Below are positions 2,763-28,049 of a DNA stretch of 30,989 nt, in pieces; position 1 is the stretch's first letter; every line of letters begins with the position of its first letter. The position numbers were made by a program, and so were the translations under genes. Source of the DNA: Prasinococcaceae sp. CCMP 1430 (Eukaryota > Plantae > Prasinodermophyta); contig RQSC01000381.1 in the NCBI GenBank assembly GCA_013416795.1, positions 46,590 through 77,578 of the forward strand. Reading direction: 5' to 3'. Below the pieces are notes generated by a model. The model made no database searches. It was not told the DNA's origin and was given only the letters and a program-made list of their open reading frames with translations.

Positions 2763-3126
2763 AAGCCCGCGCGCGCGTGCAGTTAAGGTTTGAAAGTGCA
2801 GTACGCGCACTTGTGGATCTCATCAAATGCATTGTGACTTCGAGTGCTGTGATGAAACGGTATTTGAGGTTTGAGTATGAGAGGGTTTGTACCATCATGA
2901 TGGTGTGTTCGACCGCGGGGTGCGTGCGCACCGGTGCGCGCACGTGCCGGTGCTCGCAGGCGGGGGGGGGGGAAGCGCGCTCGCCGTGGGCGCGTCCTTC
3001 CCGCGCGTGCCGGCCACCTCTGCGCTGGCGCCCTCAGCGGCCCGCTCCCCGCGTGGCAGCGCCGTCGGCGGCAGCGGGGCGCGCGGCGCCGCGATCCGCT
3101 CCTGAGGCTCTCTTGCGTGCTGCGTC

Positions 3127-4908
3127 CTATCTCTTCGCGCGCGAGCGAGGGGGCGCTGCTGCGCACTCCGCCTGGTGCGCGGCGATCCGCTTGCGCTGGT
3201 TGGCCTTGTAGGTCTTTGGGCAGCGCGGGCACTCCCACTGGCCATCACCTGAAGCCTTGGCGATAAAGTCGCGCCCGCCGGCCGCGAGGTCCGCTGCGGT
3301 GGGCCCGCCCGCGGGCAGCAGCAGCGTCACCGCGTTAGAATCTGGGACGCACCGGTCGCCCCTCCGGCAGAACGTGTCCACGAAGTCGTTGTGTTCGCGT
3401 ATTGCCATGTAAAAATGGCCCAGCGCCGTGAGCCCGTCGGTATCTGTCGCTTCCTTGTCGGCGCCGAGGCGGATGAGCTCGGCCACCGCACGGGTATCAT
3501 AGCGGCCGAATCGGTCAGTCTGCGCCATACGGTTCGCGGCCAACATGAGCGGAGTCCAGCCGTACTCGTCCGCAGCATTGACGTCGGCACCGTAATTGCA
3601 GAGCCACGAGAAGAAGGCGAACTGGTTGTGCATCGCGCACATATGTAGCGCGCACGCGCGCTTCGGACACGCGCCTTGCACAGCCAGGAGATCCTCCGCA
3701 CGATCGCGCATTTCAAGGTTACCCAAATTGGAGTAGAGCCACTCGTCGTCGTTAGCGCCAGCTGGCAGGCGGTCCATTTGTTGGAAGCAAGTCCTGAGCT
3801 CATAGGCGAGTTTCCTCTGCTGGCGTGACGGCTTTGGACCCTTGCCCTTCGCCGGCGTCTTAGCGGGCGCCCGCGCCGCCGCCAGCGGACACGCGAGCGC
3901 CTGAGCGTGCGTCATCGGCGGGCCCGCTGCGAGCATCGCCCTGGTCGCGCAGAGCAACCACCCTGGTCCCTCTCTAGCCATCACAGGCGCCGCCTCGCGG
4001 AAGCCGGTGCGCAGGAACTGCCTCGCGTCGCGCGCACGCCGCTCGTCGGCGCGTTGCTGCTCCTTAGCGCGCTCCTCCTCCTCGTCCGAGTCGGTCTCGT
4101 ACTCGGGGTTCTGCGACGCCCAGAAGTGTTCGATACGCATCACATGCAATCTGTTGCGCTCAGCCTGCGTGAGCTCGGCTTCCGAGTCGCAGATATAGGC
4201 CGCCACGTCCCAGCGCCCCTTGAGGCGCGCGTGCGACAGCAGCGCGCGCACCGCCGCCGCGCCTACGTCGGTTGCGCCGCCAGCGCGCTGGGCGGCGTCC
4301 AGCTTGAGAGTGGCAATGTACAGGAGGCCGCCCTTGCCCTTCGGCACACTCGCGAGCGCCGGGTCGCTTCGCAGCACGCGATGCCGCGGTGTACCGTCGC
4401 TCTTGAAGAGGGTCTTGGCTACAGCGTACAAATCCCCGCTCTTGAAGTCGCACAGCTCGAAGAAGCAGGCGGATGGCCGGTAGACCAGTGTCGCCGTAAG
4501 GCTCCCGACCTGCTTGCCGCCAAGGAGCACGCGCGCCCTCATCACGCGGCCGCCTCCGTCATAGTTCGGGGGGGGGGCGCCACCCAACCACGGGTTGAGA
4601 TCGTGGCCTGGAACGTCCCACCCACGGCATGGAGCGCTCTCGTCCGCTGAGCTGTCGTCGGAGTCGTCACCGGACCGCCACGCGCGCTCGAACTCGATGG
4701 ACACCGCGGGTGCCGCGCTACCCCCGGCGCTGGTGCTGGCGCCAGCGCCGGCGACGGGTGGCATGGAACGCGCCGGCACATCCGACACCAGCTCCCAGCT
4801 CATCGCCCTCGCATCGCCGGCGCCCGGTGCCTTGCAAGGCGCCGCGGCGGTCGGCGAGCCCTCCGAGAGGGCGCTCGGGGCGCCAGCCGCGGACGAATCG
4901 CCGCCCAT
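3127..4908 (-). CDS. Ankyrin-repeat protein, 593 aa, intronless, with a GNAT-like central region and C-terminal C2HC zinc-finger-like motif
   Basis: First ATG at 4908. Ankyrin motifs YGADVNAADEYGWTPLMLAA and LGADKEATDTDGLTALG. CPRCPKTY..H...C near the C-terminus. Confidence 0.8.
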   Translation of the reverse strand: MGGDSSAAGAPSALSEGSPTAAAPCKAPGAGDARAMSWELVSDVPARSMPPVAGAGASTSAGGSAAPAVSIEFERAWRSGDDSDDSSADESAPCRGWDVPGHDLNPWLGGAPPPNYDGGGRVMRARVLLGGKQVGSLTATLVYRPSACFFELCDFKSGDLYAVAKTLFKSDGTPRHRVLRSDPALASVPKGKGGLLYIATLKLDAAQRAGGATDVGAAAVRALLSHARLKGRWDVAAYICDSEAELTQAERNRLHVMRIEHFWASQNPEYETDSDEEEERAKEQQRADERRARDARQFLRTGFREAAPVMAREGPGWLLCATRAMLAAGPPMTHAQALACPLAAARAPAKTPAKGKGPKPSRQQRKLAYELRTCFQQMDRLPAGANDDEWLYSNLGNLEMRDRAEDLLAVQGACPKRACALHMCAMHNQFAFFSWLCNYGADVNAADEYGWTPLMLAANRMAQTDRFGRYDTRAVAELIRLGADKEATDTDGLTALGHFYMAIREHNDFVDTFCRRGDRCVPDSNAVTLLLPAGGPTAADLAAGGRDFIAKASGDGQWECPRCPKTYKANQRKRIAAHQAECAAAPPRSRAKR

Positions 4909-21330: not shown

Positions 21331-24300
21331 CTACTCCTTCGGCCGCCGCCGTTTCTTGTTCCTGTCGCCGTTCTTGTCGCCCCTGCTGGCGCCTTTGGCA
21401 ACCCCGGCCACGGCCTTGGCGATGGCAAGGGGCAGGGCGGCCCGTCTTGAGGCGGGTTCGCCAGAGCGCCGTGAAGCCTTGTGCTTGGGCTTGCGCCTTT
21501 TCGCGGGGGCCGCCGCCGCGAGAATGGCGGGCGCCGCGCGCTCCTCCTCGCTCTCGCTGCCCTCGCTGACATCGAGGTCGGGCTCGTCGTCGCTGGATTC
21601 GTCCGGATCCTCTTCGCTCTCGGCTGAGCCGTCGACGGCGACGCCCGCGCCGGCGCCATCGTCATCACTGCCGTCCACGTCGATACCAAGAACACCCTCA
21701 GCTGCGGCGGCAGCCGCGACATCGAAGTTCTCAGGCACCGAGAGGTCCTCCACGGCGTCGCTGTCGTACTCGACGTCGCTCACAACCCCCGCATCGCCTT
21801 CGTCCGAGGTGGCCGCCACTGCCTCGCCACGCGCCTGCGCCTCTCTGGCGACCTTCTTGGCGGCCTCCTTCTCCTGCCGCGCGCGCCTCCCCGTGCCCTC
21901 AGGCGTCTCGTCAGCCACCTTCTGCAGCTCGCCCTCGATGCGCTGCCCCGACCTCTCGAGCAGCGCCACCAGGTCGCGCGCCAGCGGCGCGAAGGAGCGG
22001 GTGAAGAGCGAGAAGGCCTCACCGGCGCGGCCGGCGCGGCCGGCGCGCCCTGCGCGGTGCGTGTACTGTCGTGCGCGACCAAATCGCACGCGCATGCGTT
22101 GCAGCGCGCGCGCACGCGCGAGTGTGAGCGCTGCGTCAGCTGGCGGATCGCGCAGGCGAGGCGCCAGGTGCCCCCCGCAGCACCTCGAACACGCACGCGG
22201 CGTACGCGCGGCGCGAAGCCTCGGAAAAGATTAAGAAGTCAACAAGGAGCATTCAGCTATATGCTTGTCATTTTGGATATCGTCTTCGGCCTCCTGTGCC
22301 CGCCCAGATCGGACGCACACGCACGCGCGTGCGCGTGCGCCCCCGCACGCGGACGCGCCATACGCACCAATTCGAGGCTCGGTGGGAAGTCGTACATGAA
22401 GACGTATTCCAGCCCGGCGATGTCGAGACCGCGCGACGCCACGTCGGTGGCGATCATGCACGTGCTCTTACCCGAACGGAAATTTTCGAGCGCGCGCGTG
22501 CGGTCGGACTGCTGCATCTCGCCGAAGAGAGTGCCAACACGCTCCTACAATACGAGGACAACCCGTGCGAGGCCGCGCGTGCGACGGAGGCGCGCATGAA
22601 CGTGCCGCGCGCGCGGCGTCAGCACGAAGGGCTCCTGACGGGTGCCACGCGTGCTTGGCCATTGCTCCGCGCGCGCGTTCGCGTTCGCATCGCCTCAGAC
22701 ATCCAAGGATGGAGCCCCAGCCGCGCTCAAGCCCCGGCAGAGGCGAGCACGATCGGTTGCTGGTACTGCGAATGTGTTTGGAGAAATGGAAACCAGACTT
22801 GTGTGTCTTCCTCATGGGCGAATGAACGAACCTCGCACGCGCGAGCGCACGCGCGCGCGCACTTGCAGGCGTCGGTGGCACGCACCTCCTTAGCGCCCTT
22901 TCTGATGATGGCCGCGCACACTCTGGCAGCCTTGACAGTGTTGACAAATACGAGGACACGTGCGCGTGCGCGCGTGCCGCTGGCCTTTTCGTTCTGCCGC
23001 AGACTCGAGAGGAAGCGCAGCAGCAGCCGCTCACGCTTGTGCGGTGCGCATACATGCACGTGCTGAGTGAGCGTTGACGACAGCTGCGTGAGGCCGGTAG
23101 GCGTCGCACCGCCGGCCAGCACCTCAGGCTCGGCATCTTCACCAGCGCCTCCAGCACCGGCAGCCTGCGAGTTCGAAATGTGTGCGAATGCGCAGGTGAG
23201 CCGGCATAGGCGAACTCGCCGGTCAGCGCTCGGTGCAAATACACATCCTGTCTTCGCTCCACACGCGCGTTCGCGTTCGCATCGCCTCAGACATCCAAGG
23301 ATGGAGCCCCAGCCGCGCTCAAGCCCCGGCAGAGGCGAGCACGATCGGTTGCTGGTACTGCGAATGTGTTTGGAGAAATGGAAACCAGACTTGTGTGTCT
23401 TCCTCATGGGCGAACGAACGAACCTCGCGCGCGCACGCACAGCGACGCGCGCGCATGGGCGGACGCACCTGCTCGGCCGCGCCCACGGTGTTGTCCTTGC
23501 TAATGGAGATCTCCTCGGCGCCGGGGGGCATCCACGCCGCCGCGGCCTCGCGCACGGCCGGGGGGAACGTCGCGCTCAGCAGAAGCGTCTGGCGATCCCG
23601 CGCGCGCGGCAGTGCGGCCACCAGCTCGTCCAGCTGGTCCTTGAAACCGTGGCTGAGCATCTTGTCAGCCTCGTCGAGGACGACCACCTGCGCGAGCGCA
23701 CGTGGTCAACGCACCGCGAAGAGCAGTCAACAGCGCAACGGTCAGCTCTGGCGGCACCGCGCGCGCGAACGGCAACGAAGCTCCTGGGAGCAAGGCCAGG
23801 CCTGGCACGCGAAGCAAGCGCCCGCGCGCGCTTGCGTGGCTTGCAGGCATCAAAAAATATTGCAACTGTATCACTTTTGTCCTCAGCCGGGCGCGGACGC
23901 CCCTTCGGTACGAGGAATGATAGGTATCATCACATGCCACGAAGCGCACGCCCGCCCGCGCACGCACGCACACACGCACGCGCGCGCGCACAAGCACACG
24001 GCACACGGCACACGCACACCGCGAAAACCACGCGCGGTCACCAACGAGAGCACGCACCTGAACTTTTCCGAGCTTGAGGGCCTTGCGCCTGTGCAGGTCG
24101 AGCAGCCGCCCCGGCGTGCCGACAAGCACGTCGACGCCAGCGGCGAGCGCGTCCGCTTGCGGCGTGATATCGGCACCGCCATGCGCGCACACCGTTGCCA
24201 CGCCGGCGAGTCGTGCGAGCGGCGAGGCCACGCCGGCGATCTGCGCGACCAGCTCGCGCGTGGGGCCAACGACGAGCACGCTCGGCGCGCCCGCGTTGTC

Positions 24301-24890
24301 CGCGCAGCCCGCACGCTGCATGATCGCCGCCACCGCGGGCAGCAGGAAGGCGAGCGTCTTGCCCGACCCGGCGGGCGCACACGCGACCACGTCGGCCCGC
24401 GTCGGCCGACGGCCCGCGCGCGCGGCGTTGAGACCTGGCGCGCACGCCGCCCACACGCGGCGCTGCACCTCGGTGGGGCGCCGCAGTCCCGCCTGCTTGA
24501 AGTAGTCGGTGTACAGCCGCGGGACGCCCGCGGGCAGCTTCGGCTCGTGCGCTCCTCCCATCACCCCCTTGGTGGCTGCGCCCTCCTTGCCGCGCCGCCT
24601 CTTTTCCTTGCCGTCGGCGAGGGCGGGCACGGCCTCGGCGAGCAGCGCACCGAGGTCCTGGTAGCAGGTGGCCTCGCGCACGCGCTTGTTGGTGCGCGAG
24701 CGCTTCTCGTGCTTGCGGCGGCCGCCACGGTTGGTGGCGCCCGACGAGCGCTCGTCCTCGCGCCGCTGCTCGGCGTCGAAATCGACCACGCCCTCGCCGT
24801 CCGCTTGCGACCTGAAAAAGGCTCCGCCGCCCTGCGCGCGGCTGCCCGCGCGCAGCGCGGCGTTGGTGCCCGCCGCCGCGCCCTCGGCGC
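21331..24890 (-). CDS. DEAD-box RNA helicase, 5'-partial, snoRNA host gene
   Basis: Exons >24890-24058, 23687-23469, 23164-22886, 22544-22368 and 22065-21331; all introns are phase 0 GT-AG. Motifs PTEVQ, APAGSGKT, PTREL, TPGRL, DEAD, SAT, LVFVNT, TDVASRGLDI, HRAGRAGR. Acidic then basic tail (KKRRRPKE). Confidence 0.93.
22215..22293 (-). ncRNA. SNORD27: Box C/D snoRNA, U27/SNORD27/snR74-like (guide for 18S Am28, yeast numbering)
   Basis: Minus strand: terminal stem gaggcc/ggcttc, variant box C AAGACGA, AAAATGACAAGCATATAG-CTGA (D' box, guide antisense to 18S AUAUGCUUGUC, fifth nt = A28), CTTAATCTTTT-CCGA (variant D box). Sense orientation within intron 22066-22367. Confidence 0.85.
22690..22821 (-). 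ncRNA. SNORD14: U14 snoRNA (box C/D), copy 1
   Basis: Minus strand: tcgcc-c-ATGAGGA (box C) ... CATTCGCAGT (domain A, antisense to 18S ACUGCGAAUG) ... TCCTTGGATGT (domain B, antisense to 18S ACAUCCAAGGA, Cm414) - CTGA (box D) - ggcga terminal stem. Lies in intron 22545-22885. Confidence 0.93.
23282..23413 (-). ncRNA. SNORD14: U14 snoRNA (box C/D), copy 2
   Basis: Same sequence as 22690-22821 at an offset of 592 bp. Lies in intron 23165-23468. Confidence 0.93.
23846..23938 (-). ncRNA. Box C/D snoRNA, family unassigned, with antisense element to 18S ACGAGGAAU(G)
   Basis: Minus strand: ggca-t-GTGATGA (C) ... CATTCCTCGTA-CCGA (D') ... TGAGGA (C') ... TTGA (D) - tgcc stem. AT-rich island within intron 23688-24057. 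Confidence 0.78.
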
Positions 24891-24891
24891 G

Positions 24892-25079
24892 NNNNNNNNN
24901 NNNNNNNNNNNNNNNNNNNNNNNNNNNNNNNNNNNNNNNNNNNNNNNNNNNNNNNNNNNNNNNNNNNNNNNNNNNNNNNNNNNNNNNNNNNNNNNNNNNN
25001 NNNNNNNNNNNNNNNNNNNNNNNNNNNNNNNNNNNNNNNNNNNNNNNNNNNNNNNNNNNNNNNNNNNNNNNNNNNNNNN
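24892..25079. other. Assembly gap
   Basis: Run of N covering the divergent 5' ends of the helicase and CCB2 genes. Confidence 1.
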
Positions 25080-25102: not shown

Positions 25103-26501
25103 ATGTCGGCGCAGCCGCCGCGGGGCGGCGCGAGCGCCGGCGACGACTTCGCCGTGTTCCAGTTCACGCTGGGCATCCCGGGCTTCGATGACAACGACGT
25201 GCCGCGAGTCGCAGGCATCCTCGCGGCCGTGCTCACTGCAGTCAACCACGTCTTTTCTCAGAGCCCGCTGCCGGCAGCCCAGGTGAGCGCGTCGCGGCAA
25301 ACGCCGAGGCGCCCGTGCGCGCGAGTGCGCGCAGCACGTCACGGCACTGACGCGGTGCCCGCACGAATCCTGCGCGCACCCACGCGCGTGCGCGCACGCG
25401 CGTGCGCGCGCGCGTTCGTACACCCACTTCATAGGCACGCACAGAGACCATCGCGCTGCTCCTTGCGGCTGCCTGCGTGGTAACGCCAGGTCTGGGACGG
25501 CGGCTTGACGAGGCGGCGCGCTCGGGGAGGCGCGCGGTGGCCGAGCTGCAGGGCACGCAGAGGGGCTTCAGGTGCGGGGCGCTCCCGCGAGGGCACACTG
25601 AGACACAGCGCGCCCGCGCAACTGCACGCTCGCTTGCGCGTGGAAGCAAGCGCGCGCGGCTCCTCGCCCTTGCCCGCGCGCCCACGGATGCTGCAGAGAC
25701 CCCGCGCTGACGCGCCCAACACTTTCCTACTGCAGGCTTGGCGACTCCGTGAGTGGCGAGGCCGCGCAGCGCGAGCTGGCCTGGGCGACATTCGCGCTGC
25801 TGCGCAACGCCAACGCCGCGTGTGTGGTCGCGTGGGGGCCTGGTGGTGAGCTCCTCGCGGCGCGTGGACAACTTCCGGCAGCCTTGCTCGGCGGAGAGGC
25901 GGACAGCGCGGGCAGGTGCGTGTTCGGGTGGCGCTACGGCGTGCCGAGTGCATGTGCTTTTGCTGCGCCGCGCGTGTGCCCACGTGCTGACCGGCACACG
26001 CGCTTTGCCCCCTGGCCGAGCTCAGGGATGTGAACAACGCCCTCGCGGACGCGGTGCGCGAGGCCGCGGTGTGTGACGCATTCACCGAGGGTGGCACCGA
26101 GGGCGGTGGCGGCGCTGTGTACCTCAGCGACCGTGGCGCAATGTCGGCCGCAGGGACGGCGTCGTTGGCGCTGCTCCCTGATGGCGCGCAGGTGCGTGCG
26201 TTCGGACGCGGGCCCCGAAGCCAGTGAAGACTCCTGACCACCGCTCGCCTGATAATTCTGCGCGCATGCACACATCCTCACACTGACACAATCGCGCGCA
26301 TGCACACGCATGTGCTTTGACACCGACCCCTCGCGGACGCGCGGCGGACCACAGGCGCTTTGGTGCTGTCCGCTGGGGCGCAGCGGCGAGCAAGCGAACG
26401 AAGGGCGGCTGCTGCTCGTGGCACCTGAGGCACGTGCGTTCTCCAAGAAGGAGCGGGCCTGGGCGGCGGCCATCGCCGCCAAGCTCGGTGGGGCGCTGTG
26501 A
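25103..26501 (+). CDS. CCB2: Cytochrome b6f heme ci assembly factor CCB2, 5 exons; transit peptide probably in the gap
   Basis: Exons 25103-25282, 25435-25571, 25736-25915, 26026-26191 and 26355-26501 join in frame (810 nt). Signatures FQFTLGIPGFDD..VPR, NH, ELAWATFALLRNAN, RAFSKKERAWAAAIAAKL. Confidence 0.88.
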
Positions 26502-26664: not shown

Positions 26665-26761
26665 GCGCCGTTGCCGCCTGAGCGCTGCGTCCTCGTAAAT
26701 CACGCGGGCGCGGCCGCAGGTGCGCCGGCGCACACGCGTGTGGGTGGTGCGCCCCCCGAGC

Positions 26762-27797
26762 TCAGAGATACGAGCCCGCCGAGTTGTTCTCGGTGACAGC
26801 CTTCTTGGCCTCGGCCTTCTTCTTGGTGTCGTCGAACGCGGGGTGCATCATGACCGCCTCGAACAGCTGCGTGCCGCGCAGGGCGTTGGTCAGCGGAAGG
26901 TGGCCCTCGGCCGAATCGGCCTCCTGCGAAGAAAGCGAGCGGAAGAAACGCGCGTATGTGCGCGATGGTCAGCACATAGTCGCCTCTGAGCCGCGGCTCC
27001 GCCGCCTCCCTGCCTCCCACGCGCGCGAAGGCACAAACACGCACACGCTCGAGGCTCTCACACGCGCTTGCATCAACGCCACTCGACGACAGAGGGACGC
27101 CCGGCAGTCTCGCGCGCCACACGCAGGAGGGGCATGTGTTTTGCGCACTCGCGTGCGCGCGCGCGCGCGCGCGCGCGCGCGCGGACTGGCCCGGGAGAGG
27201 GGCGCGGTACGCACCCACTTGAACTCCTCCGGCCACTTGCGATACGCCATGTTCTCCCCCTGCACCCAGTCGATCTTCTTGAAGAAGTCCGCCCAGCGGC
27301 ACTTGCAAGCCTTCCACACTTTCCTCTGCACGGAGAAGCCGTAGCGGCCCTTGGAGTAGGTAAGCCACAGCGTGTCGAGCATCTTCATGTCCTTCTCGGG
27401 GATCGCCGCGATCTCCGTGAAGTACACCCACTTGCGTTCGGCCGCCTCCTCGCCGGCGAGCTCGCACAGCAGCCGCCTGTGCTCGTTGTCAGCGAGCTCC
27501 CAGTTGCCCGCCTGCGTTTGCGCGCGCGAGCCGCCGCGAGCACGGGGCGTGGTCGGGGCCACCAGCGGGGGCGCGCGCAGCAGCGTCAGCATGGGCGGCC
27601 CTTCGTGGCACGCAGCATGCGCGCCGGGCGGGCGGCGCNNNNNNNNNNNNNNNNNNNNNNNNNNNNNNNNNNNNNNNNNNNNNNNNNNNNNNNNNNNNNN
27701 NNNNNNNNNNNNNNNNNNNNNNNNNNNNNNNNNNNNNNNNNNNNNNNNNNNNNNNNNNNNNNNNNNNNNNNNNNNNNNGCTGCGTCGCCGCGGCCAT
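26762..27797 (-). CDS. GUN4: GUN4 tetrapyrrole-binding Mg-chelatase activator; first exon interrupted by the gap
   Basis: Probable ATG at 27797 (MAAATQ..). Exons 27511-27215 and 26923-26762. Motifs RKWVYFTE, DTLWLTYSKGRYGFSVQRKVW, YRKWPEEFKW|EADSAEGHLPLTNALRGTQL..HPAF. Confidence 0.92.
27639..27778. other. Assembly gap
   Basis: Run of N. Confidence 1.
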
Positions 27798-27973
27798 CGT
27801 GGTGCACACGCAGACGCGCGACGGCGCACGCCTCGCGCTCTGTGGCACCGCCCTGCCCCCCGCTCCAACCCGCACACGCGCCACCCCGCCCCACCCCCTG
27901 CTGCACCCCACCCCTGCACCCTGCCCGCGCGCGCGCGCACGCTCCCGCGGCGGCCGCGCATGCAGATAAGGAC

Positions 27974-28049
27974 AAAATGGAATCCACTTTTCAAGATGGA
28001 ATCCATACGCGTCAGATACATTAATAAAAACCATAAAGGATTCCATTTT
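27974..28049. promoter_or_regulatory. AT-rich element upstream of GUN4 with three ATGGAATCC copies (two direct, one inverted)
   Basis: AAAATGGAATCC at 27974, ATGGAATCCA at 27996 and GGATTCCATTTT at 28038. Confidence 0.5.

What the first reader, a model, noticed from the sequence alone, without database searches (positions are those of the whole stretch)
21331..24890. DEAD-box helicase gene hosts one 18S-targeting box C/D snoRNA in every visible intron
Seen: the four introns (302, 341, 304 and 370 nt) are the longest resolved in the window, where many others are about 100-180 nt. Each holds a sense-oriented C/D unit with a terminal stem: U27-like (22215-22293), U14 twice (22690-22821, 23282-23413) and an unassigned guide (23846-23938). 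All have antisense elements to 18S rRNA. Established: U14 functions in 18S processing and Cm414 methylation; it sits in hsc70 introns in vertebrates and in polycistronic clusters in yeast and land plants; the DEAD-box protein Dbp4 is linked to U14 release in yeast. Inference: this is a co-expressed small-subunit biogenesis module (helicase plus guides) with a one-snoRNA-per-intron layout in an alga. I do not know of this host/guest combination, but I cannot check the literature.
Basis: partly seen in the sequence, partly recalled or inferred. Interest (0 to 1): 0.9.

Follow-up and report, generated by a model that had tools for sequence, protein, structure and literature searches.

The report
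Algal helicase gene hosting four snoRNAs
In the green alga Prasinoderma coloniale, each of the four introns of an RNA helicase gene carries a small guide RNA for the small ribosomal RNA; this is a real and apparently undescribed pairing, but the arrangement itself is well known and other algae load the same gene with different guides.

Summary
All four introns are spliced out in two RNA data sets. Each carries a sense-oriented box C/D unit: U14 twice, U27/snR74, and a guide predicted for the equivalent of Arabidopsis 18S Am1579. In wild strains the units differ at 1 of 436 sites versus 33 of 876 in the intron flanks (p about 2e-5), which indicates purifying selection. Rfam scores are below gathering, and mature RNAs were not shown. 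The host is not Dbp4; it belongs to an unnamed algal/protist DEAD-box clade near Dbp2/Dbp3. Orthologues in Volvox and Chlamydomonas eustigma carry 25S-targeting U36a, and three trebouxiophytes carry another C/D RNA, all in different introns. The closest prasinodermophyte-like orthologue lacks all four introns. U14 and U27 appear to have further copies elsewhere in this genome. One snoRNA per consecutive intron, and DEAD-box hosts, are already described in Ostreococcus. Best reading: an ordinary housekeeping host with guest turnover, not a conserved small-subunit module. Still open: whether the four introns were gained together with their snoRNAs. The scan noted the same layout at other loci of this genome (unchecked).

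The parts
24058..24891 (-). Exon 1, resolved part (ATG about 24948, inside the N gap): basic N-terminus, Q motif, motif I GSGKT, Ia, Ib
   Evidence: Pfam DEAD E 5e-22; RNA contigs; wild-strain contig for the start
23688..24057 (-). Intron 1, 370 nt, phase 0
   Evidence: Joint in X15 and X16
23846..23938 (-). Box C/D snoRNA without Rfam family. C box 23927-23933. Guide 23910-23918 followed by CCGA as D' predicts 18S A1579 (Arabidopsis numbering; yeast A1573). Second antisense element 23859-23869 pairs about 20 nt upstream in 18S. D box UUGA 23850-23853; 5-bp terminal stem
   Evidence: 1 difference in 93 nt in wild strains, inside the second element
23469..23687 (-). Exon 2: motif II DEAD and motif III SAT
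23165..23468 (-). Intron 2, 304 nt, phase 0
23282..23413 (-). U14 (SNORD14) copy a. C box AUGAGGA 23401-23407; domain A 23357-23366 (18S 87-96); Y-like hairpin about 23315-23342; domain B 23291-23301 then CUGA, predicting Cm418 (plant) / Cm414 (yeast); extended flanking stem
   Evidence: Rfam 38.7 bits, E 1e-5; no difference in wild strains
22886..23164 (-). Exon 3: subfamily signature (HVCAPHKRERL, AEHKKPRKL-type in orthologues) and motif IV
22545..22885 (-). Intron 3, 341 nt, phase 0
22690..22821 (-). U14 copy b, identical to copy a; the near-identical tract extends about 20 nt upstream and 20-25 nt downstream, then the introns diverge
22368..22544 (-). Exon 4: motif V
   Evidence: Pfam Helicase_C
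22066..22367 (-). Intron 4, 302 nt, phase 0
22215..22293 (-). U27/SNORD27/snR74-like C/D snoRNA. Variant C box AAGACGA 22280-22286; guide 22259-22269 with D' CUGA predicting Am28; second element 22226-22235 with D box CCGA predicting G42
   Evidence: Rfam 36.5 bits, E 7e-4; no difference in wild strains
21331..22065 (-). Exon 5: motif VI (HRAGR), acidic tract, basic tail, stop codon

Best explanation
This is an ordinary intronic-snoRNA host gene. Shown: one transcript is spliced at four introns, each holding a C/D unit under purifying selection with 18S antisense elements. Inferred from established pathways: each excised intron is debranched and trimmed to the ends protected by Snu13/Nop56/Nop58/fibrillarin on the C/D K-turn. 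The U14 copies then pair with 18S 87-96 during early processing and guide Cm418. The U27-like RNA guides Am28 and possibly Gm42. The intron-1 RNA guides the Am1579 equivalent, with its second element probably acting as accessory pairing. Inferred: the host is a housekeeping, probably nucleolar, helicase of an unnamed clade. Different green algae have repeatedly loaded it with different snoRNAs in different introns (constrained drift). The all-18S guest list is a local outcome, not a conserved helicase-plus-guide module.
For: Splicing; Rfam hits; target mapping; selection. Orthologues carry other guests: U36a twice in Volvox (one per intron) and in C. eustigma (both in one intron), above gathering and 25S-targeting, and a shared unnamed C/D RNA in Chlorella, Coccomyxa and Trebouxia. 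No intron position is shared with P. coloniale. The sister orthologue lacks the four introns. O. tauri keeps U14 in an intergenic cluster and U27 in a NOL6 intron. Guest mobility among broadly expressed hosts is published (PMC3511168). A telo-box lies 282 nt upstream of the ATG in wild strains, with none in the resolved window (its link to ribosome-biogenesis genes is from my own knowledge).
Against: Rfam scores are below gathering, and the C and D boxes of the U27-like unit are non-canonical. No mature small RNA or methylation data exist here. The helicase's function and location are untested. All three guest families target 18S, which is somewhat unlikely for one gene taken alone. Targets were mapped on land-plant and fungal 18S, not on Prasinoderma 18S.
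Confidence: 0.75

Rival explanations
1. Selected small-subunit module: the helicase acts on early 90S particles or U14 release, and its gene is kept linked to 18S guides so that enzyme and guides are made together.
For: All three guest families pair with 18S. Basic and acidic tails and an upstream telo-box fit a nucleolar factor. Dbp4 works with U14 in yeast (PMC10783500).
Against: The protein is not Dbp4. Orthologues host 25S guides or nothing. U14 and U27 appear to have further copies elsewhere. In human, host and snoRNA abundance correlate poorly for ribosome-biogenesis hosts (median 0.13; PMC13736004), and no correlation was seen in O. tauri.
Confidence: 0.12
2. On origin (compatible with the best explanation): the four introns are recent gains that arrived as snoRNA-carrying cassettes, so snoRNA movement created new introns rather than filling old ones.
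For: None of the four positions occurs in the sister orthologue (72-81% exon identity) or in five chlorophytes that share several positions among themselves. Three of four sit at AG|G sites. 4 of 4 carry a snoRNA. Introns 2 and 3 share a near-identical tract.
Against: Only one sister lineage was sampled. It may have lost the introns: it keeps only two 5' introns, the pattern of reverse-transcript-mediated loss. Similarity between introns 2 and 3 stops 20-25 nt from the snoRNA, which fits gene conversion or copying of the snoRNA into an existing intron. Selective retention of snoRNA introns is documented in fungi (PMC8476143).
Confidence: 0.25
3. The units are decayed or inactive copies of snoRNAs that are expressed from other loci.
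For: Sub-gathering Rfam scores, variant boxes, and other copies in the genome.
Against: 1/436 versus 33/876 differences among strains; guide-to-box spacing gives exactly Am28, Cm418 and the Am1579 equivalent; O. tauri U14 has the same AUGA-type C-box drift and algal snoRNAs are known to score poorly against land-plant models.
Confidence: 0.04

Closest known systems
Ostreococcus tauri intronic snoRNA hosts (PMC7671301): midasin, Sas10/Utp3 and an Armadillo-fold gene with one snoRNA in each of three introns; DEAD helicase ostta04g00970 with three C/D RNAs in intron 1
   Same: Green alga; protein-coding hosts, a third of them in ribosome biogenesis; one snoRNA per consecutive intron; a DEAD-box host
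   Different: O. tauri U14 is in an intergenic cluster and its U27 homologue is in a NOL6/Utp22 intron. I could not test whether ostta04g00970 is an orthologue of this helicase.
U14/SNORD14 (RF00016)
   Same: Domain A to 18S 87-96, domain B plus D box giving Cm418/414, internal hairpin, C/D stem
   Different: Score 38.7 versus gathering 64; C box AUGAGGA; domain B shortened to 11 bp against plant and fungal 18S; hosted in a helicase rather than hsc70 introns (vertebrates, own knowledge) or clusters
U27/SNORD27/snR74 (RF00086)
   Same: D' guide predicts Am28
   Different: Variant C (AAGACGA) and D (CCGA) boxes; second element predicts G42, which O. tauri assigns to a separate RNA (Ot-CDsno92), while its U27 homologue adds C38
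Arabidopsis snoR8 (At3gCDbox95; Am1579 and Um1264; PMC8583080)
   Same: D' guide predicts the same adenosine (Am1579 equivalent)
   Different: Second element pairs at about 1556-1566 instead of 1264; no Rfam match; homology not shown, only a shared target
Vertebrate DEAD-box hosts such as EIF4A1, EIF4A2 and DDX39B (own knowledge, not tested)
   Same: DEAD-box gene with one snoRNA per intron
   Different: Different helicase subfamilies and different guests
Dbp2/DDX5/DDX17 and Dbp3 helicases
   Same: Highest-scoring named relatives
   Different: The host forms a separate 100/100 clade with green-algal, dinoflagellate and labyrinthulid proteins; its function is uncharacterised

Membership tests
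Intronic box C/D snoRNA host gene | Segments are spliced introns | tested here: met
   Four joints in two RNA studies, none in DNA
Intronic box C/D snoRNA host gene | Sense-oriented C and D boxes with terminal stem, away from splice sites | tested here: met
   55-119 nt from the 5' site and 117-158 nt from the 3' site; boxes partly non-canonical
Intronic box C/D snoRNA host gene | Sequence constraint above intron background | tested here: met
   1/436 versus 33/876, p 1.6e-5
Intronic box C/D snoRNA host gene | Stable mature RNA bound to fibrillarin | not testable with these tools
   Only contigs were available
U14/SNORD14 | Domain A and domain B antisense to 18S, with B next to the D box | tested here: met
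   18S 87-96 and 414-424
U14/SNORD14 | Rfam score at gathering threshold | tested here: not met
   38.7 versus 64 bits, although full-length and E 1e-5; the assignment rests on domains A and B
U27/SNORD27/snR74 | D' guide placing the fifth nucleotide on 18S A28 | tested here: met
U27/SNORD27/snR74 | Rfam score at gathering threshold | tested here: not met
   36.5 versus 52 bits, E 7e-4
snoR8 (plant) | Guide for Am1579 | tested here: met
   +5 rule from CCGA gives the A matching Am1579
snoR8 (plant) | Second guide for Um1264 and overall sequence homology | tested here: not met
   Second element pairs elsewhere; no Rfam hit; not filed as snoR8
Dbp4/DDX10 | C-terminal extension domain of the Dbp4/Has1/Spb4 group | tested here: not met
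   Only DEAD and Helicase_C found
Dbp4/DDX10 | Closest sequence relative among named DEAD-box proteins | tested here: not met
   DDX10 44.9 bits versus DDX5 69.1; DDX17/Dbp2 rank first for the full protein
Dbp2/DDX5 or Dbp3 orthologue | Falls inside the Dbp2 or Dbp3 clade | tested here: not met
   Separate clade, 100/100 (midpoint root, no Dbp4 row)
Conserved helicase-plus-18S-guide module | Same guests in orthologous genes | tested here: not met
   0 of 8 orthologous loci or lineages carry these guides

The most novel reading that the evidence does not exclude
All four introns were gained on the P. coloniale branch as snoRNA-bearing cassettes. That would be snoRNA mobility by creation of new introns, in an uncharacterised helicase family that different green algae repeatedly use as a landing site for different guides.
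Probability: 0.22. Interest if true: 0.65.

Novelty: new member of a known kind. Interest (0 to 1): 0.36.

Why it matters
It annotates U14, U27 and an Am1579-type guide in the third green-plant phylum, whose genome paper does not mention snoRNAs. It also gives a compact example of host retention with complete guest and intron turnover: U14/U27 in Prasinoderma, U36a in Chlamydomonadales, another C/D RNA in Trebouxiophyceae, and none in a sister lineage. This fits the published constrained-drift model. Repeated hosting hints that this unnamed helicase clade belongs to the ribosome-biogenesis regulon, which can be tested in Chlamydomonas. If the introns arose with their snoRNAs, it would be a rarely documented route of intron gain.

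Tried and rejected
Rfam at gathering on the whole window found nothing. Dbp4 identity was rejected. A weak BUD22 hit on exon 5 (20.7 bits versus cut-off 37) was tempting because Bud22 binds U14 in yeast, but it covers the acidic low-complexity tract and vanishes on the full protein, so I rejected it. The idea that the intron-1 3' element guides Arabidopsis' orphan site Um1554 was not accepted: the +5 rule lands one base off and wild strains carry a substitution inside the element. Folding z-scores were uninformative (-0.1 to -1.4), as expected for C/D RNAs. A metagenome U14 scan gave 72 loci, none Prasinoderma-like and none next to a helicase, so the sister lineage's U14 locus was not found. 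Two viral-contig scans for 18S gave chance hits or nothing. Prasinoderma 18S was not obtained. The Chlamydomonas snoRNA paper (Chen et al. 2008) is not held, so whether it lists this host is unchecked. The Atlas search gave only generic DEAD clusters. No further close orthologue was found. The 18S bait scan may include human or other animal rDNA: 41 of 85 loci without the plant/fungal signature were skipped unread and were not compared or searched further.

Full report
Source and gene. The window comes from Prasinoderma coloniale: the protein clusters with PRCOL_00006169 in EukProt. The gene lies on the minus strand, with exons 24891-24058 (ATG about 57 nt into the N gap), 23687-23469, 23164-22886, 22544-22368 and 22065-21331. 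All four introns are GT-AG and phase 0. RNA contigs from two separate studies skip exactly 370, 304, 341 and 302 nt; the DNA run shows none of these joints. The spliced model was searched exon by exon by reference and the joined step was left out; full-length work used database proteins.

The four RNAs. Rfam gives nothing at gathering. In E-value mode it gives full-length sense hits: SNORD14 in introns 2 and 3 (38.7 bits, E 1e-5) and SNORD27 in intron 4 (36.5 bits, E 7e-4). I mapped targets on fetched land-plant and fungal 18S. U14 has domain A (18S 87-96) and domain B next to CUGA, giving Cm418/414. The U27-like RNA has a D' guide giving Am28 and a second element with a CCGA D box giving G42. 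The intron-1 RNA has a guide followed by CCGA that gives the adenosine matching Arabidopsis Am1579, a site guided there by snoR8 (PMC8583080). Its second element pairs about 20 nt upstream. A single 10-11 nt run is common by chance (52 of 150 shuffles); two neighbouring runs occurred in 0 of 150. The strongest evidence of function is selection: wild Tara strains differ at 1 of 436 sites in the units, 33 of 876 in the intron flanks and 19 of 2244 in the exons (Fisher p 1.6e-5; the three contigs are closely related and count as about one comparison). The single change lies in the second element of the intron-1 RNA, so I read that element as accessory pairing rather than a guide for Arabidopsis' orphan Um1554. 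Mature RNAs were not shown, because contigs cannot show them.

Copies. The two U14s are identical over 132 nt, and similarity ends 20-25 nt into the flanks, which fits recent copying or gene conversion. In the DNA run the U14 unitigs have depth 568 and 749 against 115-219 for unique parts, one contig joins U14 with a different flank, and another holds a diverged U27 copy. This suggests further U14 and U27 loci, so this gene is probably not their only source.

The host. Pfam shows only DEAD and Helicase_C. DDX17, Dbp2 and DDX5 rank first among solved structures and DDX10 far lower. In a maximum-likelihood tree the protein falls in a 100/100 clade with green-algal, dinoflagellate and labyrinthulid proteins, apart from Dbp2, Dbp3 and Ded1 (midpoint root; no Dbp4 row). 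The Dbp4-U14 link (PMC10783500) therefore does not apply. The function is untested. Basic and acidic tails, and a telo-box 282 nt upstream of the ATG in wild strains with none in the resolved window, suggest a ribosome-biogenesis gene. That is inference.

Orthologues. The closest one (P0002, 72-81% exon identity, genomic contigs with the same GUN4 neighbour) lacks all four introns, has two 5' introns that P. coloniale lacks, and shows no snoRNA hit. Two further metagenomic orthologues are intronless. Volvox carteri has U36a in two separate introns and C. eustigma has two U36a in one intron, all above gathering and antisense to 25S. Chlorella, Coccomyxa and Trebouxia share an unnamed C/D RNA in one phase-1 intron just before motif II. 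None of the four P. coloniale intron positions is shared with these five chlorophytes, and none of its guides occurs there. The family is thus a recurrent host whose guests and introns turn over.

Known context. In O. tauri 72 of 131 snoRNAs are intronic, a third of them in ribosome-biogenesis genes. Several hosts carry one snoRNA in each of two or three consecutive introns, a DEAD helicase hosts three, U14 is intergenic and U27 sits in a NOL6 intron (PMC7671301). Mobility of snoRNAs among broadly expressed hosts is the published constrained-drift model (PMC3511168). Retention of snoRNA introns is described in fungi (PMC8476143). Ten literature searches found no report of U14 or U27 in this helicase, but the key Chlamydomonas survey was not available. 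Unchecked notes of this scan list many similar hosts in the same genome.

Mechanism. Shown: splicing, anatomy, target complementarity (on non-native 18S), constraint, and guest turnover. Inferred: debranching and trimming of each intron to a snoRNP, methylation at the predicted sites, the processing role of U14, and a nucleolar role for the host. I put the ordinary-host reading at 0.75, a selected small-subunit module at 0.12, and inactive copies at 0.04. Separately, gain of the introns together with their snoRNAs has about 0.22-0.25; one sister lineage cannot separate this from loss. Verdict: real, a new member of a known kind, interest 0.36. Possible human or animal rDNA contigs were skipped unread.

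Noticed in passing
L284:2147-2225, L285:2048-2112, L286:1895-1972: An unnamed box C/D snoRNA is conserved in the same intron of this helicase in Chlorella sorokiniana, Coccomyxa subellipsoidea and Trebouxia. It has an invariant 13-nt element before D' that may pair with 18S near 77-87; no convincing Rfam family.
   Followed up: partly
L283:2059-2153 and 2933-3027; L004:3893-3971 and 4310-4387: U36a twice in the Volvox carteri and Chlamydomonas eustigma orthologues, in different introns. C. eustigma has a further C/D-like unit near 4088-4160.
   Followed up: partly
L237:355-750, L253:1175-1600: An unidentified marine eukaryote has a U27-like RNA and U14 in what look like consecutive introns of a short-exon, apparently non-coding host, followed by further conserved structured RNA.
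   Followed up: no
window 21950-22068; protein P0151: The public model PRCOL_00006169 skips motif VI by using a downstream acceptor; RNA contigs support the acceptor at 22066.
   Followed up: yes
window gap 24892-25079; L287:1-430: The 188-N gap is undersized: wild-strain contigs show at least 430 nt upstream of the ATG, including an AT-rich promoter-like stretch with a telo-box.
   Followed up: partly
L001:660-810: AT-rich island in an intron of the gene upstream of the sister orthologue, containing GUUGCAAUA as in the intron-1 RNA's second element. No C box was seen and there is no Rfam hit.
   Followed up: partly
L261:101-1454: Three identical U14 copies spaced about 645 nt apart in one metagenome contig.
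   Followed up: no
window 22209-22395: A low-depth RNA contig (X15) spans exon 4 into intron 4 and ends near the U27 3' stem; it could be an intron-retaining precursor or DNA.
   Followed up: no
window 26734-28024 and 25104-26000: Neighbouring genes look like GUN4 (also adjacent to the helicase in the sister lineage) and a CCB2/CCB4-like gene (from memory, not tested).
   Followed up: partly
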